A stretch of 64,000 nt of DNA from sequence record NC_027364.1. One strand, given 5' to 3'. How positions within the stretch are numbered: the stretch's first letter is position 1; each line of letters starts with the position of its first letter. Below, one piece after another: positions 32,701 to 49,225 of this stretch. Below the pieces are notes generated by a model that made no database searches, was not told the origin of the DNA, and saw nothing but the letters and a program-made list of their open reading frames with translations. A program made the translations under genes and the position numbers.

Positions 32701-33756
32701 CATTTCAATAAGTTTCAGTACTGCTCGGTACGTGTACTTAGTTGTCAGTGCTTCTTTAATAGAAATACAGAAGTAATGTTGTTTGTCTCTTATACTGCCG
32801 CGTTTGTAGTACCACACATGGGAGTTGTGACTGTACTTGTCTCTGTCGGATAGTTGTTGGTAGTAGTAGCTTATATGATTCATTGTAATTAGCCTTACTA
32901 TGTTAAAGTACTCGGTCCCTGGTGTACCTTTTAGAACTTAAAGATGAGGTTCAGGATAGAGCGGTACTTAGTTGCAGGGAACGTATGTTCTATTGCATAA
33001 CGTGTCACCATCCTGAAATCGTAATTATAATACAGATTATCCTTTCTCATAGGTGGTGCTAAAGAGAATGATAGCTGTTCTTGTTTGGGTAGTTTACTAC
33101 AATAGAAATCTTTATGATTATTCATAGAAATATATTAGTCCTATTAAACCTGAGTACATAATATTTTTGTTATTACATTCGATTGCTTCTATAGTACTAC
33201 GTATACAATTATTAAAGCAATCTCTGGCGTGTGGTGTATCTATACTTAAAGGTGATACACTCCTTAGAAACAATTGTTCTTCGTTGCTAAGGTATTTGGT
33301 GTAGAATTCTTTATGTTCAGTATTCATATTAGTACTCGATTAAAAGGGCAAGGATATAATAGTATTGCATACTTTCTGCCCCTTGTAAAGCATTTCTTAT
33401 GATATTACTCCTGTACGAGTTCAGGAGTTTAGGACAACGTTTGTAGTGTATAAAAGTATTTTGTGTATACAGTAGGCTTTCTCGTAGACCTTTTGTTGGT
33501 AGTGCATCGATGTAGTACTGTTCAATGTTCATATAGATAGCAGTACTAAGATTTTTGATAATTGTTTATTGCTATCCCCGCAGATGTTGCTGTGTAAAAT
33601 ACTCACAATGAGGGTATCAATTGCATTGTTCATCATAAGGGTGCATCCTGGACTATTATAATTTTTTAGCTCAATTAGCCACGAACTATCCGCGAGAAAT
33701 TCCCCGTACTCTAGTTCATTTAGAGTATTGAGGTAGTACTTAAGAGTATTTGTCAT
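29706..33756 (-). CDS. Tandem array of 17 paralogous ~60-75 aa proteins with N-terminal (H/Y)K(E/D)(F/Y)Y and C-terminal YxxLxLI(Y/F)xY
   Basis: Ten members at 29706-31641, an unrelated 223-aa gene, then seven members at 32319-33756. One of these is a 59-aa ORF at 32319..32498 missed by the track. Promoter at 33782-33810. Confidence 0.85.
31637..32308 (-). CDS. Hypothetical protein, EExFQYSLV-motif family, inserted in the HKEFY array
   Basis: ELSEEELFMYSTVID near the C-terminus. Confidence 0.65.
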   Translation of the reverse strand: MKLNAHSKQYLKHFKYLNSIQAESVTSAYTYHPNVLKKRNKKEKSSTNGVNVSKNLELYMKKNNIAVHYMNIYNTDLKVLSTNTSTKVLKNASFIINMQLDNTPCTLMLYFGNTYFFGNCNTSHDVNTAQFQMGGIYSTDAEKVHENMHFWQAQRTEETDTVLQFLKELQGKELSEEELFMYSTVIDNPALYKNAYNLTKHVQEIISTNKKMHHLITYITNYV

Positions 33757-33781
33757 GTGTAGTTCTCCTTATATTCCTTCT

Positions 33782-33810: not shown

Positions 33811-33858
33811 GGGTTTTCTTTATGGGGTAAATATGATATAATGAATAAGGAGGGAAAT

Positions 33859-35061
33859 ATGTTACCTTTTGGAAGAATGGTTAAGTACGCAAATATTGCA
33901 CCAGGTCCAGAACCTGTAGAGTTCTCAGATGTTTTACAACAACATTATACAAACTGTATGTATCTACATAACCCAACTAATACTTTATATGGTTATGGTA
34001 GTAATAACATGTATCAATTTGGTCTTGGGAATTCAGCAGCAGTTTCGTCATTTACAGTACTTGCAAGGAACTGTGCAGCCTTTTGGCTTGGTGTTCAAGG
34101 TTCGTTGATGATTGATTTGGATAATAAAATATACTACACTGGGTCTGTGGCTGCATTTTCTGATTATGGAGATGCAACACCTGTTAATGGTTATTTGACA
34201 ACATGGACTGATGTTACTGTTGCATTTAATAAAATAGGTGTTATGGCTAATATGATCAAGAGTGTATATATAGGTGAAAGTACTAGAATATTATTAACCG
34301 ATGGTAGAGTAATTGCGTGTGGAAGAAATACCAATGGTGAATGTGGCTCTGGTAATAAAAATTCCATCCCTACACTCACAGTTATGACTAATATGGGTGA
34401 AGTTACACATATGGCATGTTCATTACAAGGAACGCACTATATCAAATCAAATAAAGATGCATGGTTTTGTGGTAAGGATAACTTTGGTGAAAGTGGATGT
34501 GGTGGTAGTTCTGTTGTATATTTGAACAAATTCGTGATTAGTAATGTAGAACATATTAGTACTACATACGATGTTACTTGGTGGTTTACTACTGGTGGGT
34601 CTGTATATTATAGCGGGGCTAACAGTACTGGACAAGCGGGTAATGGTACGACTACATCGGTAAATCAGCTAACACCAATTAGGAACACATCGGTCACGGT
34701 TGATGTAAGTAAGTACAGTACTTTTATTTGTCCAAGTAATATGGGAAATGCATCAATTGGTGCACCTATGGCACAATACGCACCATATGTTAGAAGTAGT
34801 GGTGCTAACTCATATGGTCAAGAAGGTAATGGAACTAATACATTAGTTAGAACTTGGAATATTTTTAATCTTAGTGCAATAAGTGGTGGTTATGAAAATG
34901 TTCTTATGGCATCTAAAGATTGGAGCAGAACCATAATAATTACTAAAGATTATAAATTATATGCATGTGGTGGCTGGAATGGAAATGGTGGTAGATTGCC
35001 AGATGGCACTTATAGTATTACTACACTAACATTAATGCCAACGCAGTTATGGCAACAATAG
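33859..35061 (+). CDS. RCC1/BLIP-II-like beta-propeller protein 1 (MLPF family)
   Basis: Repeats GSNNMYQFGLG, GRNTNGECGSG, GKDNFGESGCG, GANSTGQAGNG, GANSYGQEGNG. Confidence 0.8.
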   Translation: MLPFGRMVKYANIAPGPEPVEFSDVLQQHYTNCMYLHNPTNTLYGYGSNNMYQFGLGNSAAVSSFTVLARNCAAFWLGVQGSLMIDLDNKIYYTGSVAAFSDYGDATPVNGYLTTWTDVTVAFNKIGVMANMIKSVYIGESTRILLTDGRVIACGRNTNGECGSGNKNSIPTLTVMTNMGEVTHMACSLQGTHYIKSNKDAWFCGKDNFGESGCGGSSVVYLNKFVISNVEHISTTYDVTWWFTTGGSVYYSGANSTGQAGNGTTTSVNQLTPIRNTSVTVDVSKYSTFICPSNMGNASIGAPMAQYAPYVRSSGANSYGQEGNGTNTLVRTWNIFNLSAISGGYENVLMASKDWSRTIIITKDYKLYACGGWNGNGGRLPDGTYSITTLTLMPTQLWQQ

Positions 35062-35069
35062 GAGGGAAT

Positions 35070-36179
35070 ATGTTACCTTTTGGAAGAATAATTAGGTATG
35101 GAAATATTGTCCCTGGTCCTAAAAAAATAATTAAAGTTGGTGCTTCTACACAAGGTCAATTCTTATTGACTGATTCACATGATTTATATTACATAGGTAG
35201 AAATCAAGGTGGTGAATCTGGAAATGGTAATACCAACACGGTGTCTTCGTGGACATTAGTAAGTGCAGATGTTTCTAATTTTTTCGTGGGTGATCGTACA
35301 CTTGTTATTATTAAAAATGATAATACTATATGGACATCAGGTCAAACGTACTGGTTCTCATCTTCTACAACTACTTCTTACAGTACTGTATTAGTTGAAA
35401 GGACTAGTTGGTTTACCAATGCTATACCAGTCAGTGAAATTGCTAATATTGTATGCACAAATGGTTTAATATTTGTACTTAGCACTAATTCAGTACTCTA
35501 TGGTGCAGGAGATAATGGATATCGTGGTTCTTTGGGTATTGGTTCATCATCAATTTACACATTAACTCAATGTGCTACGAACGTTCGTAAAGTAATGACC
35601 AATGCGAATGATAGTATGTATCTTACATTAGATAATAAGCTATATAGTTCTGGATGGAATAGTAGTGGGCAGCATGGTACGGGGAACCAAACACAAATTA
35701 ACACTTGGGGATTGCGTAGTTCTGGTGTAATCGATGCAGCCATTGGTGGTAATGCATTAAATTACTATAATGGTACATCATATTTCGTATGTGGTCAAAC
35801 TCCAAACTTTCTTAGTTCAGGTACGACTACATTCCGTGCAGTTCCTTTAAGTACTTTGCCTAATAGTTCTCCGTTGTTTATGACGAATTCACCTGCCTTA
35901 AATACTGCTACACAAATGGTAATTACTAGTACATATCAGAAGGGTGTTGGGGCGAACCGTGGTTTGGGATTAAACAATTCTCAAACTGGTGCTATATATA
36001 GTGCTACCAATTTACAATTACCCGTTGAAGTTAGTGAGATTAGGGATGTTCTTTTTAGTGATGGTTTGACATCGATATTAACCAAAAATGGAGACGTGTA
36101 TAGTACTGGATCGTATTACGCCATTCCAGGTGCAATCGAGGATGTTGCAGTCTTTACTAAAATTGATTTACCAAAATAA
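35070..36179 (+). CDS. RCC1/BLIP-II-like beta-propeller protein 2
   Basis: MLPFGRIIRYGN start after GGAGG; GRNQGGESGNG, GWNSSGQHGTG. Confidence 0.8.
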   Translation: MLPFGRIIRYGNIVPGPKKIIKVGASTQGQFLLTDSHDLYYIGRNQGGESGNGNTNTVSSWTLVSADVSNFFVGDRTLVIIKNDNTIWTSGQTYWFSSSTTTSYSTVLVERTSWFTNAIPVSEIANIVCTNGLIFVLSTNSVLYGAGDNGYRGSLGIGSSSIYTLTQCATNVRKVMTNANDSMYLTLDNKLYSSGWNSSGQHGTGNQTQINTWGLRSSGVIDAAIGGNALNYYNGTSYFVCGQTPNFLSSGTTTFRAVPLSTLPNSSPLFMTNSPALNTATQMVITSTYQKGVGANRGLGLNNSQTGAIYSATNLQLPVEVSEIRDVLFSDGLTSILTKNGDVYSTGSYYAIPGAIEDVAVFTKIDLPK

Positions 36180-36249
36180 CATAATGCCAGTACTCTGTAC
36201 TGGCTTTCTTATTTGTATTAAATATAGTATAACAAATAAAGGAGGGAAT

Positions 36250-37389
36250 ATGTTACCTTTTGCAAGAATGGTTAAGTACGGGAATATCGCACCTGAACTG
36301 ATTCTACCTAAAAACAGGTTACAATGTTCTGCTGATGCCAAATTTTATTTACACACAAATGGTAATCTATATTGGTTTGGTTCTTCAGCATATGGACAAA
36401 GTGGTAATGGTTCATTGGACTCTTCAACTGAATGGACTCTTGTCAACTCAAATGTTACACGATATTGGGGTGGGGTACAAGGAACAATTGCTATAAAGAA
36501 AGATGGTACTATTTGGTACACTGGTAGACGTACTGTTATTCCAATACTATCTTCAAACACTAACGGCGTTTGGGTTGATATAACACAGAACTTTACTGAT
36601 TTCGGTGTCAGTGCAGATGATATTGATAGTGTTGTGATATCTTCGTGTATGCGTGTATTTTTAAAAAATGGAAAGTGGTTCTACTGTGGTGCTGGTACTG
36701 GTGGTGTTTTTGGGAATGGATCAACTTCAAGCGTTTCACGATTCACCTATAGTACAATAGAAAATGTTATCAGTGCTGGTTGTGCAATATATAGTACTGG
36801 ATTAGTACTAAATGATGGTTCATATTGGTATGCAGGTAGAACGTTTGTATCAGGAACGACGACACAAAACTTGCTCACATTTACACAAGATACTTCGATT
36901 AGTAATGCAATTAAAGCAGTCAATACAAATGAAACTTCTTATATATTTCTTAATGATGGTAATGTTAAAGTTGCATCTATTAACGACTATGGACAAGCAG
37001 GTACAGGAAATAGGTCAGTAGCCCCAATGAGTACATTAATTCCAAATTTATCATTCCAAGGAGAAGTGGAGTTGGTGGGTGAGCTTGGGACAAACCTTAC
37101 CGGACCATCCTGTATAATTAATAATAATAATAAGTTATTTTCATGTGGCCTTAATTCAAATGGTCAATGTGGTATTGGTACAACTGATATGTATATAACA
37201 TCATTCGCTGAAATGGATCTTACTGCATTAGAAGGTAGTAATCTTAGTAGTTTTTGTAAGAGCTATTCTTATACGATGTTAGTTGACGAATATAATAATT
37301 TATACACATGTGGTGTACCCAATCTTACTGGAATGTCTTCAACTACTGTACCAACAAGGGTTCCTGATTCACTTCTACCGTGGAAATAA
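36250..37389 (+). CDS. RCC1/BLIP-II-like beta-propeller protein 3
   Basis: MLPFARMVKYGN; GSSAYGQSGNG, GLNSNGQCGIG. Confidence 0.8.
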   Translation: MLPFARMVKYGNIAPELILPKNRLQCSADAKFYLHTNGNLYWFGSSAYGQSGNGSLDSSTEWTLVNSNVTRYWGGVQGTIAIKKDGTIWYTGRRTVIPILSSNTNGVWVDITQNFTDFGVSADDIDSVVISSCMRVFLKNGKWFYCGAGTGGVFGNGSTSSVSRFTYSTIENVISAGCAIYSTGLVLNDGSYWYAGRTFVSGTTTQNLLTFTQDTSISNAIKAVNTNETSYIFLNDGNVKVASINDYGQAGTGNRSVAPMSTLIPNLSFQGEVELVGELGTNLTGPSCIINNNNKLFSCGLNSNGQCGIGTTDMYITSFAEMDLTALEGSNLSSFCKSYSYTMLVDEYNNLYTCGVPNLTGMSSTTVPTRVPDSLLPWK

Positions 37390-37460
37390 TATAATGCCAG
37401 TACACTGTACTGGCTTTCTTATTTGTATTAAATATAGTATAATGAATAAAGGAGGGAAAT

Positions 37461-38609
37461 ATGTTACCTTTTGCAAGAATGATGAATTATGGGAATATTG
37501 CCCCTGGTAAGGATAGGCGTTTTAAAATATATTCAAGTGATTCTATGTATCTTCATGATACTTATACTAATAAGTTGTATGCATCTTCTGCGACGAATTG
37601 GGGTACTGGAACAGGTGTAGCATCGAGTAAATTTATTCTTTGTGCGGAGAATGTTAAACGAGTTCTATTGGAAGATAACAGTAGTAGTTGTCAATTGTAT
37701 GAAGAGAAAGGTACTGGAAAAGTTTTTATCACTGGTAACACGAAGGCATTCACTGGTGTAACTGATACAAAAACTTTGTGGACGGACTGTACTACGTGGA
37801 TAACATCAGGTGGTATTAATGTTTCTGATATAAAATACATGAGTAGTTTTAATGATATGAAGGTGAATTTGATAACAAACGATGGTACGTTGTATTGTTG
37901 TGGAGTTAACAATAACTCGAACCTATCATCATTTGGTGATGGTACAAACATTAATTCTTTTAACACATTCAAAAGGGTAGATACTATAACTTCGGTCAAA
38001 AAGGCAGTTGGTAACATATACCTAAAAGAAGATAATACTTTATGGGGTTGTGGTTTTAACTATTACTATCAGTTAGGTACAGGTAATCAAACTTCTATTA
38101 CTGGGGTGACGATGATTTCTTCAGATGTTATAGATTTTGATGTAAGTTATCAGAGTACATTTTTTATTAAATCGGATAATAATTTGTACGCTTGTGGTAA
38201 ACAGTTCGGTGCACAATACGGGAACGAATTTGGCACAGGTGGTACTTCTTCATCTACCGATATACAATACAAAACTCCGACATTATTGAGTTCAGGAGTT
38301 TATACTCTATATACTTGTGTTAGTAACATGGCATCACATATAGTTAAAGGTGATGAAGTTCTATACGCATCTGGGTCGAATGGATTTGGTCAATTAGGTG
38401 TTGGTAATAATATTAATCAGTACTCATATACTCCTTCGTATACTTCGTTTAATAGTTCGTGTAATTTGGTACGCACTCCATCTGGTTCACTTATACTTAC
38501 GGACACTGAGAAATTATATTATTGTGGGTATGCTATGGTAGTAATGGGGGGAATTGCTGGACAAAACATTCTTAGTTATACAGAAGTTGATATGTCATTT
38601 ATACAATGA
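37461..38609 (+). CDS. RCC1/BLIP-II-like beta-propeller protein 4
   Basis: MLPFARMMNYGN; GFNYYYQLGTG, GSNGFGQLGVG. Confidence 0.8.
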   Translation: MLPFARMMNYGNIAPGKDRRFKIYSSDSMYLHDTYTNKLYASSATNWGTGTGVASSKFILCAENVKRVLLEDNSSSCQLYEEKGTGKVFITGNTKAFTGVTDTKTLWTDCTTWITSGGINVSDIKYMSSFNDMKVNLITNDGTLYCCGVNNNSNLSSFGDGTNINSFNTFKRVDTITSVKKAVGNIYLKEDNTLWGCGFNYYYQLGTGNQTSITGVTMISSDVIDFDVSYQSTFFIKSDNNLYACGKQFGAQYGNEFGTGGTSSSTDIQYKTPTLLSSGVYTLYTCVSNMASHIVKGDEVLYASGSNGFGQLGVGNNINQYSYTPSYTSFNSSCNLVRTPSGSLILTDTEKLYYCGYAMVVMGGIAGQNILSYTEVDMSFIQ

Positions 38610-38680
38610 TTTAATGCCAGTACACTGTACTGGCTTTCTTATTTGTATTAAATATAGTATAATGAATAAAGGAGGAATTT

Positions 38681-39871
38681 ATGTTACCTTTTGCAAGAAT
38701 GATGAATTATGGGAATATTGTCCCAGTACCACTTCAAATTAAGAAAATAATCCCAACTGATTTAGATGTTGTGGTTCTGTATACGGATGGTCAACTATAT
38801 GCACGTGGGAATAATAGTTTTGGGAAATTCGGTAGAGGAAACAACACTGCATTAAAATCATGGACATTAATTAGAGAAAACGTTAACGATTGCTGGCTTA
38901 CACAAGGAACTTTATTAGTAAAAGATAATGACTCAAATTATTTTTATTGTGGATATGGTGATCATCTTGGTTTACCAACTAGTACTACTACGTTTTTAAG
39001 TTATAACCAATATATTGAAAATTTGTACACGCAAAGTTCAAGTACTTCAATTAAACAGATGTATGGAGGTACTACGTGGTTTACGGTATTAATGGATAAT
39101 AATACAATATGGAGTACTGGTTGGAGTGGGGCTAGACAATTCGCTGATGGTACTGGTAGTACTCAACAAATAACAGATGGATCATTTGTAAAAGCTGTCA
39201 CGCCTAATGTTGATATTGCACAAATACAGTCAACAAATAACTGTGTAATGTTTTTTGATACACAAAATAATTTATATATTGGTGGTGGTACGTCAGGTAT
39301 AAGTACCAGTACCACATGGACACCATTTAATGAATATACTTTATATAAACCAAGTACAACATACACAAAAACGTTACAATACACTGGATGCTCAAGTGGT
39401 GCAGTCAGTGCTTTGGTTGAGAATCCAAGTTCTGGTGCACGTCAGTTTCTAGTTGGTGGTTTAGCGAGTAATGGTGCATGGGGTAACAATACCACAACCA
39501 GTTCGGCACTTGCTGTATTAGGGAGCAATAGTACGACATTACCAACTGGAACTTTGTATTCAATTCATACAGGATACCCAACACAATCTAGTATACTAGT
39601 TACGAGTACTGGTGTATATGCAACTGGTTTAAATGCCAGTAGTTATGCTGGTTCATTGGGTATTGGTACTAGTGCAACTGTTGGTAAGTTTACTGCATGT
39701 CCAATGCCTACACAAATAACATATTCTATGTATGATAAAATAAAAATATATCGCGGTTCGTATCGTACTTTTCTAACTGCTGATATGAAAAATATATATT
39801 CAACCGGAACTTATGATGATGGTGGTCCTAGTACAACTAGATATGTTCTGGATACACCTAGACAATTGTAA
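38681..39871 (+). CDS. RCC1/BLIP-II-like beta-propeller protein 5
   Basis: MLPFARMMNYGN; GNNSFGKFGRG, GWSGARQFADG. Confidence 0.8.
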   Translation: MLPFARMMNYGNIVPVPLQIKKIIPTDLDVVVLYTDGQLYARGNNSFGKFGRGNNTALKSWTLIRENVNDCWLTQGTLLVKDNDSNYFYCGYGDHLGLPTSTTTFLSYNQYIENLYTQSSSTSIKQMYGGTTWFTVLMDNNTIWSTGWSGARQFADGTGSTQQITDGSFVKAVTPNVDIAQIQSTNNCVMFFDTQNNLYIGGGTSGISTSTTWTPFNEYTLYKPSTTYTKTLQYTGCSSGAVSALVENPSSGARQFLVGGLASNGAWGNNTTTSSALAVLGSNSTTLPTGTLYSIHTGYPTQSSILVTSTGVYATGLNASSYAGSLGIGTSATVGKFTACPMPTQITYSMYDKIKIYRGSYRTFLTADMKNIYSTGTYDDGGPSTTRYVLDTPRQL

Positions 39872-39945
39872 TAATTTCGCCAGTACTTCAGTACTGGCTT
39901 TTCTTTTTTGTATTAAATATATTATAATGAATAAAGGAGGGAATT

Positions 39946-41125
39946 ATGTTACCTTTTGGAAGAATGATGAATTATGGGAATATTGCCCCTGGCAAAGATA
40001 CTGTTGTTAAAATTAATAGTGATGAAAATTCAATAAGCGTATTATACAGTGATGGGTCATTATATATGCGTGGACGGAAACCAATTATCAAAAATGGGAG
40101 TTACTGGTTCATCTTTTTTAGATAGATGGGTTTTATGTCCTTATAGTGTTGATGATTTCTGGAGTTCTTTATATTGTACTATAATTAGAACAAAACAAGG
40201 GGAATTGTACTATAGTGGAACTAACTCAGTTTTTGGTATATCATCTTCTGTTTCAACATGGACTCGTTGTGAATCATATTTTGGATCTATTTCTCCGAGT
40301 TCAATAAAAGATATAAAAATAACATCATCAACCAGTACTAACAATTCCATGTTAATACTAACAAGTGACGGTCAGTTATATGGTATAGGCATGAATGGTG
40401 CAAGTGAATTGGGTACAGCAACTACACCAATTACATCTCCACTCTTAATAGACACTAGTGTATCTGCAATTGCATCTAGTGAAATGAGCAGAAACTTTCA
40501 CTATATAAAAGATGGTATATATTATCGTTGTGGTGAGAATACTTTTTATCAATTAGGAACCGGTGATAATAATCCTATTACTACTTTTACTGCATTGAAT
40601 CTTGGTAGTTCTCATGTAATTGCAGTACAAGCTACACGATGGGTAACACGTTTGATTGTTCAAAGTAGTACATCTGCTTTGTCTTTAATGGTGGCTGGTT
40701 GGAACACACAGTTGACTATAGGTGGTTCTGAAAATACTGCTATAATAAGGTCATCATTTACTACAAATCCCTATACCGATATAACAGCAAATTCATTCGA
40801 TAAACTTTCACCAGTATCCTATGTTAATGCAATAAAATCCAGTACTAACATTATTAATACGAATGGTAAGGGATATAATTCTAATGGTGCTGGATTAGGC
40901 CGCAACGCATTCTCTGGGAATTATGGTTCAATATTACCAATAGAATTCTTTGATGATAGTGTTGACTTATCATATGTTGAGTGGTTTGGTACGATTGGTA
41001 ATGGTTCAGTATCGGTAGTTAGTATAGGTGAGGATTTATACTGGACTGGAAACCCTGGGTATTTTACTGAACAAGGTGAGACTGGATATATATATAAATT
41101 CAAAAAGTGCATTCCTTTTAGATAA
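39946..41125 (+). pseudogene. Beta-propeller protein 6, split by a +1 frameshift near 40075 (real or sequencing error)
   Basis: MLPFGRMMNYGN..LYMRG frame stops at codon 60; the +1 frame continues NQLSKMG..GENTFYQLGTG. Confidence 0.7.
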
Positions 41126-41196
41126 ACACAATGCCAGTACTCTGTACTGGCTTTCTTATTTGTATTAAATATAGTATAATGAATAAGGAGGGAATT

Positions 41197-42348
41197 ATGT
41201 TACCTTTTGCAAGAATGATTCAGTACGGGAATATTAAACCTGTTCCTGTAACACCAACGATAAAAGATTTTAAGATTGGTTTTTCCCATGAAGTGTTATT
41301 GGACAGTGCAGGTGATGTGTGGGGTATTGGATATAATACCGCTGGTCAGTTGGGATTTCTGGATGCTAACACAAATTCAATAGGAATGTGGTCTAAGATA
41401 TATGAGAATGTTAGATTAATTGGCGTTACTGCCAATTATACAGTTGTAGTTACAAATAATAATAGAATACTTTACGCTGGAAATAACTTAATTTCTAATA
41501 CTACAACGTTTGGGTGGAACGATATAACGTCTAGTATGGGAGCGGTTGTAGTGGATAGCATCGATGCATTATATTGCACAGATGGCATGATGCATATTAA
41601 AACTGCTGATGGTTCTTTATACGCATATGGACGTAATATGAACGCAAACGCTGGAGTTACTGGCGTTTCTGGAGTTATTAGTGTTGCAACTAAAGTTAGT
41701 GGTTTACCATCGGCTGTGAAAGATATACGATATACGTTTAGTTATGGTACAGTACTATGTCAATTAGATACCACCTCGGTATATGGATGGGGAAGAAATG
41801 TCAATGGTGAATTAGGTCAGGGGAACGCAGCCGCAGTTCCTACCCCATCCCAAAGGGCGGGTGCTTCTATTGCTATAGGTACTTCGTATAATGCTACTGC
41901 AATTGTTTCCGGTACTGCATCGTTGGTTACATGTGGTGGACAAAATGATGGTCAGTTAGGTAATGGTATTACTACTGCTGGTAATGTATACACATATGGT
42001 GCTAGAGCATACCCAAGCGATCTTAATAATATAAGAAGTCCAGTGGATTGCAGTACAACTTATACATCTGCATTTATGAGTCCAGATGGCATATATTACA
42101 CGGGTTCGAACCGAAGTGTGTTTGGTGGTCCGAGCGGGACTGCCACGGTTGCAGTATATACCAAATGTAGTGATTTACCAATATTATATTCTAATATAAC
42201 ACAGTGGTGTAGTGGTACTATTGGTGGTGCGATATGTAGCAGTACTGAATTATATCAGTGTGGGACCGGTAGATACATTGCCGGAGATGGGCAGAACGCA
42301 ACTAGGTATGGGTTTAGAAAGACACCATTACCTTGGGATGCTTATTGA
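41197..42348 (+). CDS. RCC1/BLIP-II-like beta-propeller protein 7
   Basis: MLPFARMIQYGN; GYNTAGQLG, GRNVNGELGQG, GGQNDGQLGNG. Confidence 0.8.
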   Translation: MLPFARMIQYGNIKPVPVTPTIKDFKIGFSHEVLLDSAGDVWGIGYNTAGQLGFLDANTNSIGMWSKIYENVRLIGVTANYTVVVTNNNRILYAGNNLISNTTTFGWNDITSSMGAVVVDSIDALYCTDGMMHIKTADGSLYAYGRNMNANAGVTGVSGVISVATKVSGLPSAVKDIRYTFSYGTVLCQLDTTSVYGWGRNVNGELGQGNAAAVPTPSQRAGASIAIGTSYNATAIVSGTASLVTCGGQNDGQLGNGITTAGNVYTYGARAYPSDLNNIRSPVDCSTTYTSAFMSPDGIYYTGSNRSVFGGPSGTATVAVYTKCSDLPILYSNITQWCSGTIGGAICSSTELYQCGTGRYIAGDGQNATRYGFRKTPLPWDAY

Positions 42349-42419
42349 CATTATGCCAGTACTCTGTACTGGCTTTCTTATTTGTATTAAATATAGTATA
42401 ATGAATAAAGGAGGAATTT

Positions 42420-43595
42420 ATGTTACCTTTTGTAAGAATGTTGGATTATGGAAATAAAGTTTTACCATATATTCCCAATTTTGTTAAATTAGTTACCCCG
42501 TCATGTGGTTATTCATATACATGCACGATGATGCTTGACAAAAATGGTTCAATATGGGCTATTGGTCTTCAGAATGGTGGAATTTTTGGTTTAGGTCATA
42601 CTAATCAAGTAACTGAATGGACACAAATATACAGCAATGTTAAAGATTTTTGGTGCAGTACAATGAACTCTTTTTGTCTAATACGCACAAATGATGATAG
42701 ATTCTTTTATAGTGGTTTAGATAAATGGCTAGGTAATAACACAACAAATACAGTGACAACATTCACTGAATGTACAAGCTATTTCGCACAATTTGGTATT
42801 TCAAAAATTAAAGAGATATACGTGGGTTATGATTATGCTTTGATTTTAGATACAGATAATAGTTTATATTTGTTAGGTGATAATACTGGTGCTAAGTTTG
42901 GAATAAACACTGCATCATATTATAATAAATTTACATTTTTAGTGGATAATGTTAAAAAATTCTGTTCATCGATAACGCCAGCTAACTGGATTATTAAACT
43001 TGATGATACAATGTGGCGTACAGGAACAACAACTTCCGGTACTTTGGGAAATAGTAAGCAACAAACGTATGTATTCCCTTGGGTTCAATATAAGGGTACA
43101 CCTATTACAGAAGCAATAGATATTTTTTGTAGTTCGAATTATATTGGTATTATAACAAAAGGTACACCAGAATCATGTCCAATGTACACTCTAGGCTTTC
43201 AAGGTTATGGTCAATTGGGTAATAATAATGTAACATCTGCTTATAAGTTAAACCCAGTACTATCAACTACAGTTCCAGATGATAGTGAATTCATTCGAAT
43301 AGAAAACACTAGTACTCGTGGACTCGTATATTATAGTTCAGGTAAAATTTATAGTACTGGTTATAATAACAATGGTCAATTGGCAAATAATACTACAAGA
43401 GAATCAGGTTCATTTGTTGAAGCAATTTTACCTAGTGGTGTTCAATTTAAGAAAAGTGAATCACTAGTTGCAGGAAATGATGCAACATTGTATATGTTCA
43501 TTAATAATAAATTATACTACGCAGGGAAATCACCAGATAATGTATCTGCAAGCAGTTCATCTGTTATGAAAGAATTCCTACTTCCTACAATTTGA
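42420..43595 (+). CDS. RCC1/BLIP-II-like beta-propeller protein 8
   Basis: MLPFVRMLDYGN; GFQGYGQLGNN, GYNNNGQLANN. Confidence 0.8.
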   Translation: MLPFVRMLDYGNKVLPYIPNFVKLVTPSCGYSYTCTMMLDKNGSIWAIGLQNGGIFGLGHTNQVTEWTQIYSNVKDFWCSTMNSFCLIRTNDDRFFYSGLDKWLGNNTTNTVTTFTECTSYFAQFGISKIKEIYVGYDYALILDTDNSLYLLGDNTGAKFGINTASYYNKFTFLVDNVKKFCSSITPANWIIKLDDTMWRTGTTTSGTLGNSKQQTYVFPWVQYKGTPITEAIDIFCSSNYIGIITKGTPESCPMYTLGFQGYGQLGNNNVTSAYKLNPVLSTTVPDDSEFIRIENTSTRGLVYYSSGKIYSTGYNNNGQLANNTTRESGSFVEAILPSGVQFKKSESLVAGNDATLYMFINNKLYYAGKSPDNVSASSSSVMKEFLLPTI

Positions 43596-43670
43596 TTATT
43601 TTAAATGCCAGTACAGAGTGCTGGCTTTTCTTTTTGATTAAATATAGTATAATGAATAAAGGAGGGATTT

Positions 43671-44876
43671 ATGTTACCTTTTCCAAGGATGATAAAATAC
43701 GCAAATAAAATGAAAGTTCCTGAAGTGAAAGAAATCTTTATTTACAATGGTTATAGTGCGTCAGTTATTCCAGCAACAGCACTCTTACTATTATATAAAA
43801 ATGGAGACTTAATGGGTATAGGTGGAACTAGTTCACAAAACTATGGATTCGGAAATGGTGTACCTAATGCGAAAGTAAAAGAGTGGGCTTTAATATACCA
43901 AAATGTAAAACGTTTTAGAACAGCCCAAGGTTCTTTTAATTTAATCCAAACCGAAGATAATAAATTTTATTACAGTGGCGTAGGTAGAGCTATTGGTACA
44001 GGATTAAGTACTGTCAGTACTTATACTGATTGTACTTCATATTTTACATCAGTATTCAATGCAACACAATTGTCGCAAATTAAGGACATTCAAATTGTAG
44101 GGGAGGGTATTTTTGTTTTACTTCAAAATGGTACGCTATATGGAATGGGGGCCAATACACAGGGATATTTTGGTAATAACACAACCACAAGATTATCAAC
44201 ATTTACTTCAATTAATACGAATGTGGATAGTGTAAAAACAGGTTCAAGTGCAGTGATTGTGCAGAAAATTGATAAAACACTTTGGGTCACTGGTCAAAAC
44301 ACATGGGGTTCACTTGGTATAAGTAATGGTGAAACTAACGTTAAAGTATGGACACAAATGGGTGCATTAGCCAACAATACTGTTATACATTATGAACTTG
44401 GTGGGAGTGCATCATGGGTTGTATCTAAACACAACACGAATAATACATATACAGTTCGTGCAAGTGGGATTCAATCGGAAGGTAACTTGGGTAATGGTTC
44501 AGCCGCTTCATCAGGGACAGTATTATCTACAATCTCCACTCTACCAATATCAGATAATATGGAAATGAAATCAAATTCATTAACATATGGTGGGCTTACG
44601 GTTAAAACTAACAATTCACTTTATATGTGTGGTATAAACACATATGGTAGGCTCGGTCGCGGTAATACCACATCAAGTACTACATTTGTAGTTCCAGTTG
44701 ATGCACCTAAAGTTGGCAGCATCGAGTTATTCTGTCCAAGTGAATGTACAAATGTGTATATGGATAATCAAGGGGATGTGTATTTGAGTGGCTATATCCC
44801 ACAAGCGACAGGTACAACAGTTTCTGATTATTACACTAAATTTCAATTATATAAAATACCCAGTCGTGGTATATAA
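43671..44876 (+). CDS. RCC1/BLIP-II-like beta-propeller protein 9
   Basis: MLPFPRMIKYAN; GQNTWGSLGIS, GINTYGRLGRG. Confidence 0.8.
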   Translation: MLPFPRMIKYANKMKVPEVKEIFIYNGYSASVIPATALLLLYKNGDLMGIGGTSSQNYGFGNGVPNAKVKEWALIYQNVKRFRTAQGSFNLIQTEDNKFYYSGVGRAIGTGLSTVSTYTDCTSYFTSVFNATQLSQIKDIQIVGEGIFVLLQNGTLYGMGANTQGYFGNNTTTRLSTFTSINTNVDSVKTGSSAVIVQKIDKTLWVTGQNTWGSLGISNGETNVKVWTQMGALANNTVIHYELGGSASWVVSKHNTNNTYTVRASGIQSEGNLGNGSAASSGTVLSTISTLPISDNMEMKSNSLTYGGLTVKTNNSLYMCGINTYGRLGRGNTTSSTTFVVPVDAPKVGSIELFCPSECTNVYMDNQGDVYLSGYIPQATGTTVSDYYTKFQLYKIPSRGI

Positions 44877-44947
44877 AATAAAGCCAGTATTTTGTACTGG
44901 CATTTTTTTGTCCTAAATATAATAACGATTTACATTTGGAGGATACA

Positions 44948-46100
44948 ATGCTACCCTTTGGAAGAATTATCACATCATCAAAAAAGAACATACAACCTTC
45001 TGTTACAAAAATAGCTTCATCTGATACGACAGTTTTTGCCCTTATGTCAGATGGTACGTTGTACAGTAGAGGCTCTCAAGAGTTTGGGCAAATGGGTATA
45101 GGTAATATTATAACACAAACGAAATGGGTTTTATGCAATACAAACGTAGAAGATCTATGGGTGCGGGTATGAGTCAACCTTAATAAAAAAGAAAGATAAT
45201 ACGATGTGGTACGCTGGAAATGGTGCATCATTCGGTTTATCAACTGATAAGTCAACAACGTGGTCTTCTGCAAAGATAGTGTTTGATAGAATAACAGCCC
45301 TAGGCAAAACAATAAAACAAATTGTAGTTAGTGCAGGAGCACTGAGCGTATTATGCACAGACAACACTATATGGAATACAGGCTATGGTAGTTATGGTCA
45401 ACTAGGAAATGGTAGAAGTACTGATTCACTTTCATCATTTGTACAAGGAACAGTACCTACTGGAGTTACACCATCCAAAATATTGGCAAATTTTCTTATG
45501 CAAGGTTTTATTGGAACCGATGGAAGATTGTATTATACTGGTGCAATATCAGGCGTAGGTACAACCGACATGACGTTATATTCAAAGTACACGTTATGTT
45601 CTCAAATAACTAATACCTATACAGTAAAAGATTATACAACAAACTCAAGTTACTTTGCTTTTGCTATAGCAAATAATAATAGTACTAATAAATTATTTGC
45701 ATATCATGGTGGTGGTCAATACTTTGGTCAGTTAGCAAATGGTTCTACATCACAAACATATATTTCGTTAAGACAAACAACACAAGCACCTGGCGATATA
45801 ATAAGAAGCAGTGTAGGTTATTCATATTTTTCTAATCATATTATAACTTCATTGGGTGTTTACGCAACTGGTAATAACACAGGCGATAACGCAGGACAAT
45901 TAGGTATAGGTACACAAACCGATGTGTCGGCCTATACCAAATGTGTACTACCAACAGAGATGAATATGAATAACGTATATGTTACAGCAACTTTATACAG
46001 AACTTACTTAACCGATGGTATACAAATTTACAGTACTGGACAAAATATTACAGACGGTGGAGTTGCCAGTACTGTATTTGTCAAAGATTCACCATTTTAG
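44948..46100 (+). pseudogene. Beta-propeller protein 10, split by a +1 frameshift near 45160 (real or sequencing error)
   Basis: Removing one G from CTATGGGTGCGGG restores LWCGYESTLIKKKDNTMWYAG and joins 44948.. to 45204..46100. Confidence 0.7.
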
Positions 46101-46743
46101 GAATATTGTACAAAGTGTATGCAGTTATTTTAGAACTCTTTTTAAATTCATCATAGAGAAAATTCAAAATTCTGGAGCATTCAATATACTTTTCAATATC
46201 TTTATGGATTAATGAGTACTGAAACATTAAATCAGATGATATATTGTAGGTACTACCTTTTAAACTGTTTAAAATATCACAGATTTCAGGGTTTACGGGT
46301 ACTTCGTCAAAATTATCATCTAAAACATTTATTTCAAAATCAAAGCCATCTTTGTTTTTGATTAATTTGATAATAGAATCACCATAAACATTATATTGTT
46401 TTAATGGATTTACTACAATGTTAAAAAGATTGGATGTATTACAATCAATATCCATAAAGTATGTATTATCATTGTACTTAATATTGAAACATCCGTACTC
46501 AATAAAATCACCCGGAGTTATTGATGAGTTTCTTCTCGTTTCAACATAAGAAGCTTTAATGTTGTTTTTATGTAAAAGAGTAATAAATTTCTTAGACTGT
46601 TTAGCACCAGCTAAGTAAGTATTATAACTTGGTCTTTTAAAGATTATAGGACTAGACTTCTCTCCAGAGAAATATTTTTTTATAAATTTACGTTGTTTAA
46701 CAAAATAATTTTTATAAAACAAACCTAATTTTGATTTCATCAT
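46081..46743 (-). CDS. Hypothetical protein, EExFQYSLV-motif family
   Basis: SSDLMFQYSLIH near the C-terminus; convergent with the propeller array. Confidence 0.65.
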   Translation of the reverse strand: MMKSKLGLFYKNYFVKQRKFIKKYFSGEKSSPIIFKRPSYNTYLAGAKQSKKFITLLHKNNIKASYVETRRNSSITPGDFIEYGCFNIKYNDNTYFMDIDCNTSNLFNIVVNPLKQYNVYGDSIIKLIKNKDGFDFEINVLDDNFDEVPVNPEICDILNSLKGSTYNISSDLMFQYSLIHKDIEKYIECSRILNFLYDEFKKSSKITAYTLYNIPKMVNL

Positions 46744-46785
46744 AACTCCTTATACATCCAGTACTTAATAGTACTGGATTTTTTA

Positions 46786-49225
46786 TTATGACATACGCTT
46801 ATTATGAATGGAATTATGAATGGATTTTAAATAATTATATAATTTTATCAATCCACTACCAGTAGCTACAAACAGTAGTGCTGTTGGTATCATACATCCA
46901 AACATGGTTATTAATTCATGTATTTCCATACCATCACTATTTGGTCCCACATCAAATATAACAACCAAAACAACACCTAAAATGCTTAGACAATAATATC
47001 CCATAAAGACCATAAAAGTGATATATCCGGCACTTGATTTAATATTACATAACATATTATACACTGGATTAATACAGAAGAAGTATAATAACCATACCAG
47101 TGTTCCAGTACTGAACATAATAATTGAAATAATGGAAAATATCTCACGGTAACTCATATTATTTCCTCATACCCAAACGTTGGTGGATTTCAGAGATCTT
47201 TATATACAATAGTACCACAAGGTGCAGTACTAAACAACATATAATTACGGCTAATACCAATGAACATATCATAAGACCAAAGGTTATTGTATTCAAAGAG
47301 GATGTGAACAGTCCAATTATTAATACAATAAAACCAAAATTGAATACTGTACCCAACACAGTATATGCTGGACTATATCTCTTTTGGATTACATCATATA
47401 TATTTGATAATGGTCGCTTATGGAAGTACTTCCCAATGCACACGAATGCATTCAGTGAGAAGATAAATGTATACGCCATTACTAGTAATTGACCAACGAA
47501 AGATAATTCTATCCCGTTCATACTAACCTCGTTTACGTTTTTTAATTGTACTGTGCATCTTTTCGAAATAGGGAACCAAAACATATTGAACAGTTTGCCA
47601 GATAACCATTAGATTATGCACTGCACCACCAAGGATACCAAACACTAGAACAATAATTGCCATAATAGGATCACCGTCTACCATACCCCATTTAAAGATA
47701 TGTAAAATCCAAGCAATGACTAGACAAAATAAACTAAGCCAATACGTAATGAAAAATCCGGCTTGTAATTCATAATCATCAGCAATTTCATCGTATACCG
47801 TTTCTAAAAATGATACACAAAAGAATTTACCAATTATAACCACAGTACTAATAAACAGCATAGCAGTTAAGATAATAAGAGCAATTTCCATTACATCCCT
47901 CGTTTACGCTTTTGATTGCGTCTAAATTCTGTTAGTCTACGGCTAATCGGCGGCATCAGACTACATAAAAAAGTAACAGTTGTTGGTAGTAACATCAAGT
48001 CAATCATTGCAGTGTTATTTGGTGGATCAAACACCAAAAAATACACACAAGAAACACTAATAATGGTTGAACCGATAAAAGGAATACAAAATTCTTTTAT
48101 CTGTTTTTCAACATAATCAAACATCTTGAGTACAAATAAAAATCCAACCCAACACATAATGAAATAGAATGAATACAACGTGTAAATCAATGTTACTATA
48201 TCCATTAGTACCTCGCATCAGGAACTTTAGCACGTAACTTATGAACGACTGGGAACAACAACAAACTTACATATGCAATAGTTGAACCCCAATAGAATAC
48301 TAATACAATTGGTTCACCATTAGAACGGAAACCTCTACTAATCATTGAGTAGTGAATAATAGGCATAATCATCGCCATACCAAACCATGCGTGTAATTTT
48401 AATTGCAGCATGTTATCAGCGATGAATACTGAAATTGGTCGTTTAAAGAACCACATCAGAAAGTAGAATCCAGCACTAATAATATAGTACATGGTACTAA
48501 CTTTCATATACCACGGCAGTAAATCAATAAAGTACTCCATCATTCCTCCGGTATCTTGTTTCGAAGTTCAATCATAACACAACATAGTTTAATGAACAAG
48601 TAAAAAACTACACATATCATACCCAATGTACCGTAAACTGCGGAAAATGCGGGTAGTACCTTTCCTGTGAGTGTTGCCACAATACATGCCATCAATGTTG
48701 ATGCAAACATCGATTGATTAATGACAGAATTCATAAAATCTTCACCTTTACGTTTATAGAATTGTCTTTTAAAATACCATCCTAGAAACATAACTACCCA
48801 AAATGTTACATAAGTTGTTAAAATAATCCCTGCAAGTGAATGTGCAACTGGACTACTCCTTAAAAACTCAAGATAAGCTTCAAACATTAGAAGTCTCCGC
48901 GAATTTTATCTCTACCATGAATAATGAGATGGATTAAGTATACACCTAACCAAATGAACAACCCCAAGAATACAATATATTGTGAGATTGAGTTCAAGTG
49001 AGGATTAGCACAATAAATTAAGTGTGCCATAAGACCAACAATTGCAAACAAACCTTGAACAAGTGTGTAAAGAATTAGTGATGAATTCCTTACTGGATAC
49101 AGTTTAAAAACAATTTTCTTTTTAAAATACCATAGTACTACAACTAGTGCATGATAAAAGAAAAAACCAAAAAGATAAATCAAAGTAATACTAATCATTG
49201 TATCTGATTTAAAAAATTCTAACAT
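46786..49225 (-). CDS. Array of seven ~105-125 aa multi-pass (about 3 TM) membrane proteins
   Basis: 46786..47157, 47159..47521, 47523..47891, 47891..48205, 48205..48543, 48540..48887, 48887..49225; three hydrophobic stretches and basic C-tails; coupled stops/starts. Confidence 0.8.

What the first reader, a model, noticed from the sequence alone, without database searches (positions are those of the whole stretch)
33859..46100. Ten interchangeable beta-propeller cassettes sharing an N-terminal MLPF(G/A)RMxxY(G/A)N tag
Seen: ten ~370-400 aa RCC1/BLIP-II-like genes with very divergent bodies but a conserved ~13-residue N-terminus. Most are bounded by a near-identical ~65-bp terminator + TAAATA + RBS block. 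Known: TATAAATA is the T4-type late promoter, and RCC1-like propellers are protein or glycan binding scaffolds. Inference: late-expressed, swappable adhesin or receptor-binding heads that dock on the virion (or a chaperone) via the shared tag. The repeated spacers would be recombination points for adding, losing or shuffling cassettes, like a phage-borne integron without an integrase.
Basis: partly seen in the sequence, partly recalled or inferred. Interest (0 to 1): 0.82.

Follow-up and report, generated by a model that had tools for sequence, protein, structure and literature searches.

The report
Swappable tagged virion-protein gene cassettes
A 348-kb E. coli phage carries ten interchangeable late genes for binding-type propeller proteins that all begin with the same 12-13-residue tag; related giant phages put this tag on quite different binding domains found in their virions, so it is probably the address label that fixes a changeable set of binding heads to the particle.

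Summary
The window is Escherichia phage PBECO4 (Asteriusvirus). At 33,825-46,100 it has ten tandem + strand cassettes. Eight are intact RCC1-like seven-bladed propellers of 369-401 aa, and two carry one frameshift each. Nearly every cassette has its own terminator hairpin, a TAAATA late-promoter-like element, a strong ribosome-binding site and the shared N-terminal tag.

New findings:
- The tag occurs nowhere else in the genome, but it is conserved across at least six groups of ~350-kb phages.
- It also heads Kelch propellers, ConA-like lectin domains and glycine-rich domains.
- AlphaFold2 leaves tag residues 1-18 disordered in front of a confident propeller.
- Published virion mass spectrometry found tag-bearing proteins in phAPEC6 (8), CBB (7 of 9) and GAP32.
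- Array content and order differ among near-identical relatives, and all 34 homology break-points fall within -76 to +50 nt of a tag start codon.
- Alleles are under purifying selection (median dN/dS 0.17).

Best reading: autonomous late units encode virion-associated binding heads, incorporated through the tag and reshuffled by recombination in the repeated spacer-tag block. External display is inferred, and a T4-like capsid-targeting role is the main rival. The label "chromosome condensation" is unsupported. I found no paper describing the tag or the cassette shuffling.

The parts
33825..33858 (+). Upstream block of cassette 1: TAAATA late-promoter-like element (from 33828) and AAGGAGG ribosome-binding site; no terminator hairpin
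33859..35061 (+). Cassette 1 (type A): tag plus RCC1-like propeller, 400 aa, intact. The RefSeq start at 33841 lies inside the promoter/RBS block.
35070..36179 (+). Cassette 2 (type B): tag plus RCC1-like propeller, 369 aa. It follows cassette 1 after 8 nt with an RBS only.
36180..36249 (+). Spacer: hairpin 36186-36204 plus T-run, TAAATA from 36219, RBS
36250..37389 (+). Cassette 3 (type C): tag plus RCC1-like propeller, 379 aa
37390..37460 (+). Spacer: hairpin 37396-37414, TAAATA from 37429, RBS. The 120-nt block 37385-37504 is 95% identical to 38605-38724.
37461..38609 (+). Cassette 4 (type D): tag plus RCC1-like propeller, 382 aa. Modelled with AF2 (pLDDT 91.7; residues 1-18 below 50). Absent from phage CRJP21.
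38610..38680 (+). Spacer: hairpin 38616-38634, TAAATA from 38649, RBS
38681..39871 (+). Cassette 5 (type E): tag plus RCC1-like propeller, 396 aa
39872..39945 (+). Spacer: hairpin 39879-39898, TAAATA from 39914, RBS
39946..41125 (+). Cassette 6 (type F): tag plus RCC1-like body, broken by one frameshift (no in-frame stop). The same state is seen in CRJP21, slurp01 and SHEFM2K.
41126..41196 (+). Spacer: hairpin 41133-41151, TAAATA from 41166, RBS
41197..42348 (+). Cassette 7 (type G): tag plus RCC1-like propeller, 383 aa. It is 96% identical to phAPEC6 gp005, which was detected in virions.
42349..42419 (+). Spacer: hairpin 42355-42373, TAAATA from 42388, RBS
42420..43595 (+). Cassette 8 (type H): tag plus RCC1-like propeller, 391 aa
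43596..43670 (+). Spacer: hairpin 43607-43625, TAAATA from 43639, RBS
43671..44876 (+). Cassette 9 (type I): tag plus RCC1-like propeller, 401 aa
44877..44947 (+). Spacer, diverged copy: hairpin 44883-44901, TAAATA 44914-44919, weaker RBS
44948..46100 (+). Cassette 10 (type J): degenerate tag plus RCC1-like body, broken by one frameshift (no in-frame stop). The same state is seen in five relatives; it is the terminal cassette of the array.

Best explanation
Each cassette is a self-contained late transcription unit. An intrinsic terminator insulates it from its upstream neighbour. A T4-type late-promoter element (TAAATA) is read with the phage's gp55-like sigma factor, and a short leader carries a strong ribosome-binding site.

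The protein has three parts:
- a 12-13-residue N-terminal tag;
- a short, often proline-rich linker;
- a compact binding domain, which in PBECO4 is always a seven-bladed RCC1-like propeller.

The tag is a fold-independent signal that incorporates the protein into the virion by binding a conserved but still unidentified structural protein. The particle would therefore carry a mixed, low-copy set of binding heads. These are most likely exposed on the outside, on the capsid or tail fibres or 'hairs' typical of these phages, and most likely act as accessory adhesins for surface glycans or proteins.

The ~120-nt terminator-promoter-RBS-tag block is repeated before nearly every cassette. It is the substrate for homologous recombination, both within a genome and between co-infecting relatives. 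This deletes, adds, replaces and reorders whole cassettes while each body stays under purifying selection.

Shown: the anatomy, the tag's distribution and modularity, cassette-wise exchange, and virion association in relatives. Inferred: late timing (from the motif), the tag as the docking element, external display and the adhesin role.
For: Anatomy.

Late promoter:
- Structural genes of PBECO4 carry the same element.
- A gp55-like sigma factor is encoded (gp530).
- The ATAAATA motif was proposed as the late promoter in CBB and GAP32 (PMC5259590).

The tag is a peptide-level module:
- It occurs only in the ten array genes of PBECO4.
- 140 distinct tag-bearing gene starts were collected from phage records and metagenomes. 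P3 and Y10 are present in 140 of 140, N12 in 137, G11 in 132 and R6 in 126, each through several synonymous codons.
- It is present in Asteriusvirus, Munch, fENko-Kae01, GAP32 and CBB (Mimasvirus), Hallingskeid and fHe-Yen9-04, with a variant in Xanthomonas phage XaC1.
- A DNA pattern scan for the tag hit only ~350-kb phage contigs plus one 109-kb contig in IMG/VR.
- It heads four unrelated folds: RCC1-like, Kelch, Laminin_G_3/ConA-like and Gly_rich_2.
- In the AF2 model (pLDDT 91.7, pTM 0.88) residues 1-18 score below 50 and the propeller starts at residue 21.

Virion association:
- phAPEC6 gp003, 005, 006, 007, 009, 010, 549 and 551 are all array members (PMC7247149).
- CBB_536, 537, 548, 549, 551, 552 and 553 all carry the tag.
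- GAP32_001 was identified by mass spectrometry.
- ENKO_525c is flagged as LC-MS/MS-identified in its record.

Binding or external character of the bodies:
- They have low charge and about 40% S+T+N+G.
- The nearest cellular homologues carry signal peptides or T9SS sorting domains.
- RCC1-like domains occur inside tail-fibre proteins of other phages.
- ConA-like bodies match baseplate and virion-protein PHROGs. Tag-less homologues are 'virion structural protein' in ~148-kb phages.
- No enzyme body was found among about 200 tag-bearing ORFs.

Shuffling:
- Nine relatives carry 34 cassette types in different orders.
- All 34 of 34 homology-block ends lie within -76 to +50 nt of a tag ATG, a zone covering about 10% of the array.
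- The loss of type D in CRJP21 equals one repeat unit between two 95%-identical 120-nt blocks.
- UvsX- and UvsY-like genes are present.
- Median dN/dS is 0.17 over 73 allele pairs.
Against: - No docking partner is known, and a 13-residue anchor is far shorter than the N-terminal anchor domains of known phage receptor-binding proteins.
- The virion proteomes also list obvious non-structural proteins (SSB, RecA-like, thymidylate synthase). Coverage of the RCC1-like proteins in phAPEC6 is low (3-17%), so co-purification is not excluded.
- In the fENko-Kae01 record only the glycine-rich cassette is flagged as found by LC-MS/MS, not its RCC1-like neighbours. I could not read the supplementary table.
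- Nothing locates the proteins on the outside. phAPEC6 and 121Q also have an inner body of unknown composition.
- CBB is hairy yet has no RCC1-like gene, so the hairs themselves are not made of these propellers.
- Promoter timing is inferred from a motif only.
- Part of the similarity of the tags within one genome is DNA-level homogenisation (tag DNA is 83% identical).
Confidence: 0.55

Rival explanations
1. The tag is a T4-style capsid-targeting sequence. It would bring the proteins into the scaffolding core of the prohead, so that they end up inside the head (perhaps in the inner body) and are ejected into the cell. There the propellers and lectin-like domains would act as a changeable arsenal of binders against host defence proteins, as T4 internal proteins do.
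For: - These phages are distantly T4-like: they have a gp55-like sigma factor and a gp21-like prohead core protease.
- The pattern matches: a short N-terminal leader on unrelated bodies in a hypervariable locus.
- phAPEC6 and 121Q have an inner body of unknown composition, and the phAPEC6 authors suggested the RCC1-like proteins for it.
- The proteins are low-copy in virions.
Against: - No conserved acidic residue or other fixed site follows the tag, where a gp21-type protease would be expected to cut. Position 9 is E in only 19 of 140 tags, and the linker is variable.
- The tag is absent from every head-cluster gene.
- The bodies are 200-460-aa all-beta binding folds of low charge, not small basic proteins or enzymes.
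- The same body types sit in tail-fibre and baseplate proteins elsewhere.
- Four of the six CBB virion proteins that GAP32 lacks are tag-bearing. The CBB authors linked the genes absent from GAP32 to the extra external whiskers.
Confidence: 0.22
2. The conserved 5' end has no docking role. It would be kept by gene conversion of the spacer block and by requirements of translation initiation. The proteins would be abundant late non-structural proteins that merely co-purify with virions.
For: - The conserved block runs continuously from the terminator into the first ~40 coding bases, and tags tend to be alike within one genome.
- Homology blocks end inside the tag.
- The proteomes include clear contaminants.
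Against: - The invariant residues are encoded by several synonymous codons across genera whose spacers no longer align. Examples: P3 is CCT 80, CCA 52, CCG 7; Y10 is TAC 73, TAT 67; G11 uses four codons.
- The tag is kept on four unrelated folds and in cassettes lacking the hairpin and promoter block (cassette 2; most Munch, Hallingskeid and Yersinia-phage cassettes).
- Detection in four independent virion preparations covers 7 of 9 CBB and 8 of about 13 phAPEC6 members.
Confidence: 0.08
3. As the database names say, these are DNA or chromosome condensation proteins that organise the packaged genome.
For: Only the family name (RCC1) and the speculation in PMC7247149.
Against: - The name is transferred from eukaryotic RCC1, whose fold is a general binding scaffold. 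The top structural matches are UVR8, HERC2 and RPGR as much as RCC1.
- K+R is only 6-7% and pI is 5.1-9.0.
- Kelch, ConA-like and glycine-rich domains replace the propeller in the same slots of related phages.
- The closely related phage CBB has none.
Confidence: 0.04

Closest known systems
T-even phage internal-protein locus with capsid-targeting sequence (T4 IPI, IPII, IPIII, Alt; Repoila et al. 1994, as cited in PMC3012670)
   Same: A short conserved N-terminal leader sits on otherwise unrelated proteins. The locus differs between close relatives, conserved flanking expression signals and leader go with variable bodies, and the proteins end up in the virion.
   Different: No conserved protease site follows the tag. 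The bodies are large all-beta binding domains, not small inhibitors or enzymes. There are ten to fifteen tandem units, each with its own terminator. The location in the particle is unknown and more likely external.
Multi-valent receptor-binding systems with a conserved N-terminal anchor and variable C-terminal head (CBA120 tailspikes, G7C gp63.1/gp66, the many depolymerases of Klebsiella jumbo phage K64-1/RaK2; from my own knowledge)
   Same: One virion carries several alternative binding proteins. The N-terminus is conserved for attachment, the rest is variable and horizontally exchanged, and break-points lie at the anchor-head junction.
   Different: The anchor here is 12-13 residues plus a linker, not a folded domain of 100 residues or more. 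The heads are predicted monomeric propellers or lectin jelly rolls, not trimeric beta-helices. No enzymatic (depolymerase) heads were seen.
Short N-terminal tail peptides that dock a fibre or spike onto a vertex protein (spike P5 on the penton of phage PRD1; fibre tails of some animal viruses; named from my own knowledge, no sequence used)
   Same: A short, otherwise unstructured N-terminal peptide suffices to fix a binding protein to a capsid protein.
   Different: Those systems have one fibre type per virion and a fixed vertex site. Here the same peptide heads many different proteins and the site is unknown.
Integron gene-cassette arrays
   Same: Tandem exchangeable cassettes are bounded by a repeated element, and content and order vary between close relatives.
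   Different: No integrase and no attI/attC sites are present. Every cassette brings its own promoter, ribosome-binding site and terminator. Exchange is consistent with homologous recombination in a 120-nt repeat.
Accessory capsid and tail adhesins (T4 Hoc and other Ig-like decoration domains; cited in PMC5259590)
   Same: They are non-essential-looking, low-affinity binding modules displayed on virions, proposed to raise the rate of encounters with hosts.
   Different: Those are single genes with Ig-like folds, without a shared tag and without cassette arrays.

Membership tests
RCC1-like repeat beta-propeller superfamily (Pfam PF00415/PF13540/PF25390; PHROG 4219) | RCC1 repeat signatures detectable by profile | tested here: met
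   PF00415 and/or PF13540 score above their cut-offs in nine of the ten (all but cassette 5). PHROG 4219 gives E 1e-63 to 1e-117 for the four array proteins scanned (1, 4, 8, 10).
RCC1-like repeat beta-propeller superfamily (Pfam PF00415/PF13540/PF25390; PHROG 4219) | Seven-bladed propeller fold | tested here: met
   The AF2 model has pLDDT 91.7. Foldseek top hits are UVR8, HERC2 RLD, RPGR and RCC1, with E 1e-17 to 1e-12 and TM about 0.7.
RCC1 proper (regulator of chromosome condensation: chromatin-bound Ran exchange factor) | Chromatin or DNA association and exchange-factor role | tested here: not met
   No basic tail is present; K+R is 6-7% and pI 5.1-9.0. The slot is filled by other folds in relatives. 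Biochemical activity cannot be tested with these tools.
T4-type late transcription unit | TATAAATA-like -10 element shortly upstream of the start, plus a gp55-like sigma factor in the genome | tested here: met
   TAAATA lies 28-34 nt before the ATG in 9 of 10 cassettes. The same element precedes the major capsid, hub, sheath, tube and fibre genes. Background is 2.8% of random 90-nt windows. The gp530 late sigma factor is present.
T4-type late transcription unit | Late timing of the transcripts | not testable with these tools
   I found no transcriptome of an Asteriusvirus in the literature searches.
T4-type capsid-targeting sequence / internal proteins | Short conserved N-terminal leader shared by unrelated cargo proteins | tested here: met
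T4-type capsid-targeting sequence / internal proteins | Prohead-protease cleavage site at the end of the leader | tested here: not met
   No fixed acidic residue is present. Position 9 is E in 19 of 140 tags and the following linker is variable. The specificity of this phage's protease is itself unknown.
T4-type capsid-targeting sequence / internal proteins | Location inside the head and ejection with the DNA | not testable with these tools
   The published proteomes are of whole particles only.
Modular phage receptor-binding proteins | Conserved N-terminal attachment part plus variable C-terminal binding part exchanged between relatives | tested here: met
Modular phage receptor-binding proteins | Folded anchor domain and trimeric fibre or spike architecture | tested here: not met
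   The tag is 12-13 residues and predicted disordered. The body is a single closed propeller. The oligomeric state is not testable here.
Modular phage receptor-binding proteins | Demonstrated binding to a host receptor | not testable with these tools
   No binding data were found in the literature searched.
Integron | Site-specific integrase with attI/attC recombination sites; promoter-less cassettes | tested here: not met
   No integrase is annotated in the array or anywhere in the genome tables. The repeat is a terminator-promoter-RBS block, and each cassette has its own expression signals.

The most novel reading that the evidence does not exclude
The 12-13-residue tag is a universal, fold-independent docking peptide. 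One conserved site on the virions of the ~350-kb GAP32/121Q-like phages would accept any protein that carries it. Each particle would then display a combinatorial, quickly re-assortable library of lectin-like heads: a phage-borne adhesin repertoire whose diversity is generated by cassette recombination rather than by point mutation.
Probability: 0.4. Interest if true: 0.85.

Novelty: new variant of a known kind. Interest (0 to 1): 0.72.

Why it matters
- It replaces a misleading annotation ('regulator of chromosome condensation', 'DNA condensation protein') that has spread through dozens of jumbo-phage records with a testable model.
- It assigns a likely role to 2-4% of the coding capacity of a whole clade of giant phages.
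- It may explain which genes differ between otherwise almost identical isolates that are being developed for therapy and biocontrol. The fEgEco12 paper noted these genes among the few divergent ones.
- A short peptide that suffices to place unrelated domains on a virion would be a new assembly principle for tailed phages.
- The array gives a clean natural example of how a repeated expression block drives modular evolution.

Tried and rejected
**Hypotheses tested and rejected**
- N-terminus as the 'velcro' strand closing the propeller: rejected. It is disordered in the model and is shared with non-propeller folds.
- The tag on other protein classes elsewhere in PBECO4: none found. RCC1-like genes outside the array: none found.
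- Sigma-70-type promoters in the array: no enrichment (60 found against 77 +/- 7 in shuffles).
- tRNA genes in the window: none.

**Searches that did not help**
- A profile search of 1.84 billion representatives with the family alignment put only giant multi-RCC1 proteins on top. It showed that the fold is ubiquitous (129,832 hits) and said nothing about the tag.
- Literature: I searched for RCC1 with jumbo phage, for Asteriusvirus, for literal tag strings, and in a 2026 review. No description of the tag or of cassette shuffling turned up.
- The fENko-Kae01 supplementary proteome table was not available as text. Repoila 1994 is not held.
- No solved structure matches the glycine-rich cassette by sequence.
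- I did not look for the docking partner by phyletic profiles; the remaining record look-ups were too few.

- Later I wrote from memory a 7-residue motif of the fibre tail of an animal virus.
- My script output lists lengths of tag-bearing reading frames. From these the ends of the two truncated frames could be inferred.

Full report
**What the window is**

Megablast identifies the window as Escherichia phage PBECO4, a 348-kb jumbo myovirus of the genus Asteriusvirus. The match is 100%, and window coordinate + 124,000 equals the record coordinate. The finding covers RefSeq genes gp286-gp296. They form a + strand island between long runs of - strand genes, and this shows up as a reversal of GC skew.

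Ten tandem cassettes occupy 33,859-46,100.
- All match RCC1-type Pfam models and PHROG 4219.
- Eight are intact, at 369-401 aa.
- The 6th and the 10th each carry one frameshift and no in-frame stop.
- The broken state is shared by four phages (PBECO4 and three relatives) for the 6th and by six (PBECO4 and five relatives) for the 10th, all sequenced independently. These are inherited breaks, not sequencing errors.

The shared start is real.
- Nine cassettes begin with the same four codons. Cassette 4, for example, starts M-L-P-F-A-R-M-M-N-Y-G-N-I.
- The tenth has a degenerate copy of the tag.
- Residues 1-13 are 73% identical among the intact paralogues, against 27% for the bodies.
- Five of the nine invariant alignment columns lie in the first twelve residues.

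Before cassettes 3-10 lies a spacer of about 70 nt.
- It holds an 8-bp-stem hairpin plus a T-run, then TAAATA, an AAGGAGG ribosome-binding site and the ATG.
- Cassette 1 lacks the hairpin.
- Cassette 2 abuts cassette 1 and has only the ribosome-binding site.
- Several RefSeq start codons ignore the tag ATG, which hides the shared N-terminus in the public annotation.

**Late promoter**

I fetched the rest of the genome piecewise.
- It encodes a 'sigma factor for late transcription' (gp530).
- TAAATA occurs in 2.8% of random 90-nt windows.
- The same hexamer stands shortly before about 22 of 32 structural genes. These include the major head protein, hub, sheath, tube and fibre genes.
- It also stands in all nine cassette upstream regions.
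- The best matches to the array's 15-nt promoter block outside the array precede the tail-tube gene gp020 and the tail-fibre gene gp515.
- The CBB paper independently derived ATAAATA as the putative late promoter of CBB and GAP32 and noted their gp55-like sigma factor (PMC5259590).

Late timing is therefore well supported by inference, but it has not been measured.

**The tag is a peptide module, not a by-product of the repeat**

- In PBECO4 the tag occurs only in the ten array genes, and there are no RCC1-like genes elsewhere.
- tblastn and DNA-pattern scans find the same start in several phage groups:
  - Asteriusvirus;
  - Salmonella phage Munch;
  - Klebsiella phage fENko-Kae01;
  - Cronobacter phage GAP32 and Pectobacterium phage CBB (Mimasvirus);
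  - Erwinia phage Hallingskeid;
  - Yersinia phage fHe-Yen9-04 (Eneladusvirus);
  - Xanthomonas phage XaC1, in a variant form.
- A degenerate DNA pattern for the tag hit 19 stretches on 9 IMG/VR contigs. Eight of the contigs are 348-378 kb and one is 109 kb.
- In metagenomes, true hits (ribosome-binding site plus an ORF of at least 200 aa) separate cleanly from about 20 chance hits.

Column shares over 140 distinct tag-bearing starts:

| Position | Residues (count of 140) |
|---|---|
| 1 | M 140 |
| 2 | L 87, I 51 |
| 3 | P 140 |
| 4 | F 138 |
| 6 | R 126 |
| 7 | M 72, I 55 |
| 10 | Y 140 |
| 11 | G 132 |
| 12 | N 137 |

- The invariant residues use several synonymous codons.
- My search pattern fixed part of these columns, but the alternatives it allowed were rarely used.

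**The tag heads unrelated folds**

- RCC1-like propellers.
- Kelch propellers, for example Hallingskeid CDS0073 and CBB_550, 552 and 554.
- ConA-like (Laminin_G_3) jelly rolls, for example ENKO_515c and CBB_548 and 551.
- Gly_rich_2 domains, for example 121Q gp243 and ENKO_525c.
- Several bodies without a Pfam match.

No enzyme was found among them.

AlphaFold2 on cassette 4, with an alignment of 22 relatives, gives a confident seven-bladed propeller (pLDDT 91.7, pTM 0.88).
- The propeller starts at residue 21, while residues 1-18 score below 50.
- Foldseek places the fold with UVR8, HERC2, RPGR and RCC1.
- Among viral models it also matches domains inside tail-fibre proteins of Pseudomonas phages and PVP-SE1 gp40.

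**Virion association in relatives**

- In phAPEC6, virion mass spectrometry listed gp003, 005, 006, 007, 009, 010, 549 and 551 (PMC7247149). The record shows that all of them are array members. gp005 is 96% identical to PBECO4 cassette 7.
- In CBB the syntenic array holds nine tag-bearing Kelch and lectin-like genes. Seven were found in virions at 9.5-51% coverage.
- GAP32_001 was identified by mass spectrometry.
- ENKO_525c is flagged as LC-MS/MS-identified in its record.

Caveats:
- These proteomes also contain clear non-structural proteins.
- Coverage of the RCC1-like proteins in phAPEC6 is low.
- The fENko-Kae01 record does not flag its RCC1-like proteins.

**Cassette shuffling**

I cut each array at its tag starts and clustered the bodies at 80% DNA identity or more. 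Nine phages gave 34 cassette types.

| Phage | Cassette order (' = frameshifted) |
|---|---|
| PBECO4 | A B C D E F' G H I J' |
| CRJP21 | same, but lacking D |
| slurp01 | K L A B C D E F' G M N J' |
| SHEFM2K | K L A B C D E F' G O N J' |
| E9.1 | K L A B C D E P G Q N J' |
| G17 | R A B S D T E P Q M O (locus cut) |
| 121Q | D T B C E P U G Q' O V J' |
| phAPEC6 | D W T B A S E P G Q O V N (locus cut) |
| EJP2 | 14 cassettes, only three of them (B, D, L) shared with the other phages |

- All 34 internal ends of homology blocks between PBECO4 and these relatives lie between -76 and +50 nt of a tag ATG. That zone covers about 10% of the array.
- The missing D cassette of CRJP21 equals exactly one repeat unit between two 120-nt blocks that are 95% identical.
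- Tags can differ between alleles of the same body type. This fits junctions inside or just after the tag.
- Orthologous alleles are under purifying selection, with median dN/dS 0.17 over 73 pairs. Diversity therefore comes from exchange of functional units.
- UvsX- and UvsY-like recombination genes are present.

**Mechanism, and how sure each step is**

My estimates:

| Claim | Probability |
|---|---|
| Array anatomy and cassette-wise exchange | shown |
| Late transcription units | about 0.8 |
| Virion association | about 0.85 |
| Tag is the incorporation signal | about 0.65 |
| External display as accessory adhesins | about 0.5 |

Evidence favouring external display:
- The body types are binding folds.
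- Their composition is low in charge, with about 40% S+T+N+G.
- Their nearest cellular homologues are secreted.
- The same domains occur in fibre and baseplate proteins of other phages.
- Four of the six CBB virion proteins absent from GAP32 are tag-bearing. The CBB authors suspected the genes absent from GAP32 of building that phage's extra external whiskers.

The main rival is a T4-like capsid-targeting leader on packaged, ejected proteins.
- The T-even internal-protein locus has the same logic (PMC3012670).
- These phages have an inner body of unknown composition.
- Against it: no conserved cleavage-type site follows the tag, no head gene carries the tag, and the cargo has the wrong character.

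The database label 'chromosome condensation' has no support.

**Novelty**

The paralogy and the mass-spectrometry hits were published (PMC5259590, PMC7247149). One paper noted that these genes differ between sister phages. In the searchable literature I found no description of the following:
- the tag;
- its presence on several folds;
- the self-contained cassette structure;
- the spacer-bounded shuffling.

I rate it a new variant of known kinds: modular receptor-binding proteins, and T4 targeting leaders.

Output of my script shows reading-frame lengths from which the ends of the two truncated frames could be inferred.

Noticed in passing
window 29,700-33,760 (- strand): About 18 tandem ORFs of 59-77 aa with repeated 5' ends. 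This is probably the 'tandem array of very similar genes' reported for 121Q (PMC5646251). Their + strand GC skew is positive (+0.12 to +0.20), unlike other - strand gene blocks in the window; this is unexplained.
   Followed up: partly
window 27,770-29,700, repeat at 28,540-28,690: An ORF-poor stretch of about 2 kb holding an 8-nt periodic tandem repeat (family D1). Its function is unknown.
   Followed up: no
window 46,081-48,205 (- strand); L043 8,361-11,952; L022 6,899-9,299: The right flank of the array is a block of small tandem paralogues plus a ~220-aa protein. The homologous flank in CBB and fHe-Yen9-04 is annotated as membrane proteins or lipoprotein. The arrangement 'array next to membrane-protein block' is conserved across genera.
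   Followed up: partly
window 33,841; 36,184; 41,131; 42,438; 43,710 (RefSeq starts of gp286, gp288, gp292, gp294, gp295): The annotated start codons either run through the terminator and promoter block or skip the tag. The public proteins therefore do not show the shared N-terminus.
   Followed up: yes
window 39,946-41,125 and 44,948-46,100: Two cassettes each carry one frameshift that is conserved in 4 and 6 independently sequenced phages. They are inherited pseudogenes or, less likely, recoding sites. The terminal one also has a decayed tag and a weaker ribosome-binding site.
   Followed up: partly
L043 (CBB), L021 (fENko-Kae01), L019 (GAP32), L018 (Munch), L022, L023: In CBB and fENko-Kae01 the arrays abut the boundary of the direct terminal repeat. 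In several other phages they lie at the ends of the records, so the locus may sit at the physical end of the unique genome.
   Followed up: partly
window 46,756-46,779 and many late-gene upstream regions elsewhere in the genome: Hairpins built on the same CCAGTAC/GTACTGG stem recur outside the array, including before structural genes. They may be a genome-wide terminator or processing motif of this phage.
   Followed up: no
L078 9,519-10,271 (metagenomic tag-bearing ConA-like cassette): Besides Laminin_G_3 (E 4e-10), this cassette gives a sub-threshold match (E 1.3e-3, below cut-off, no stretch passing) to Pfam PF07953, the lectin-like receptor-binding jelly roll of a clostridial neurotoxin. 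I read this as fold-level likeness among ConA-like domains and did not pursue it.
   Followed up: no
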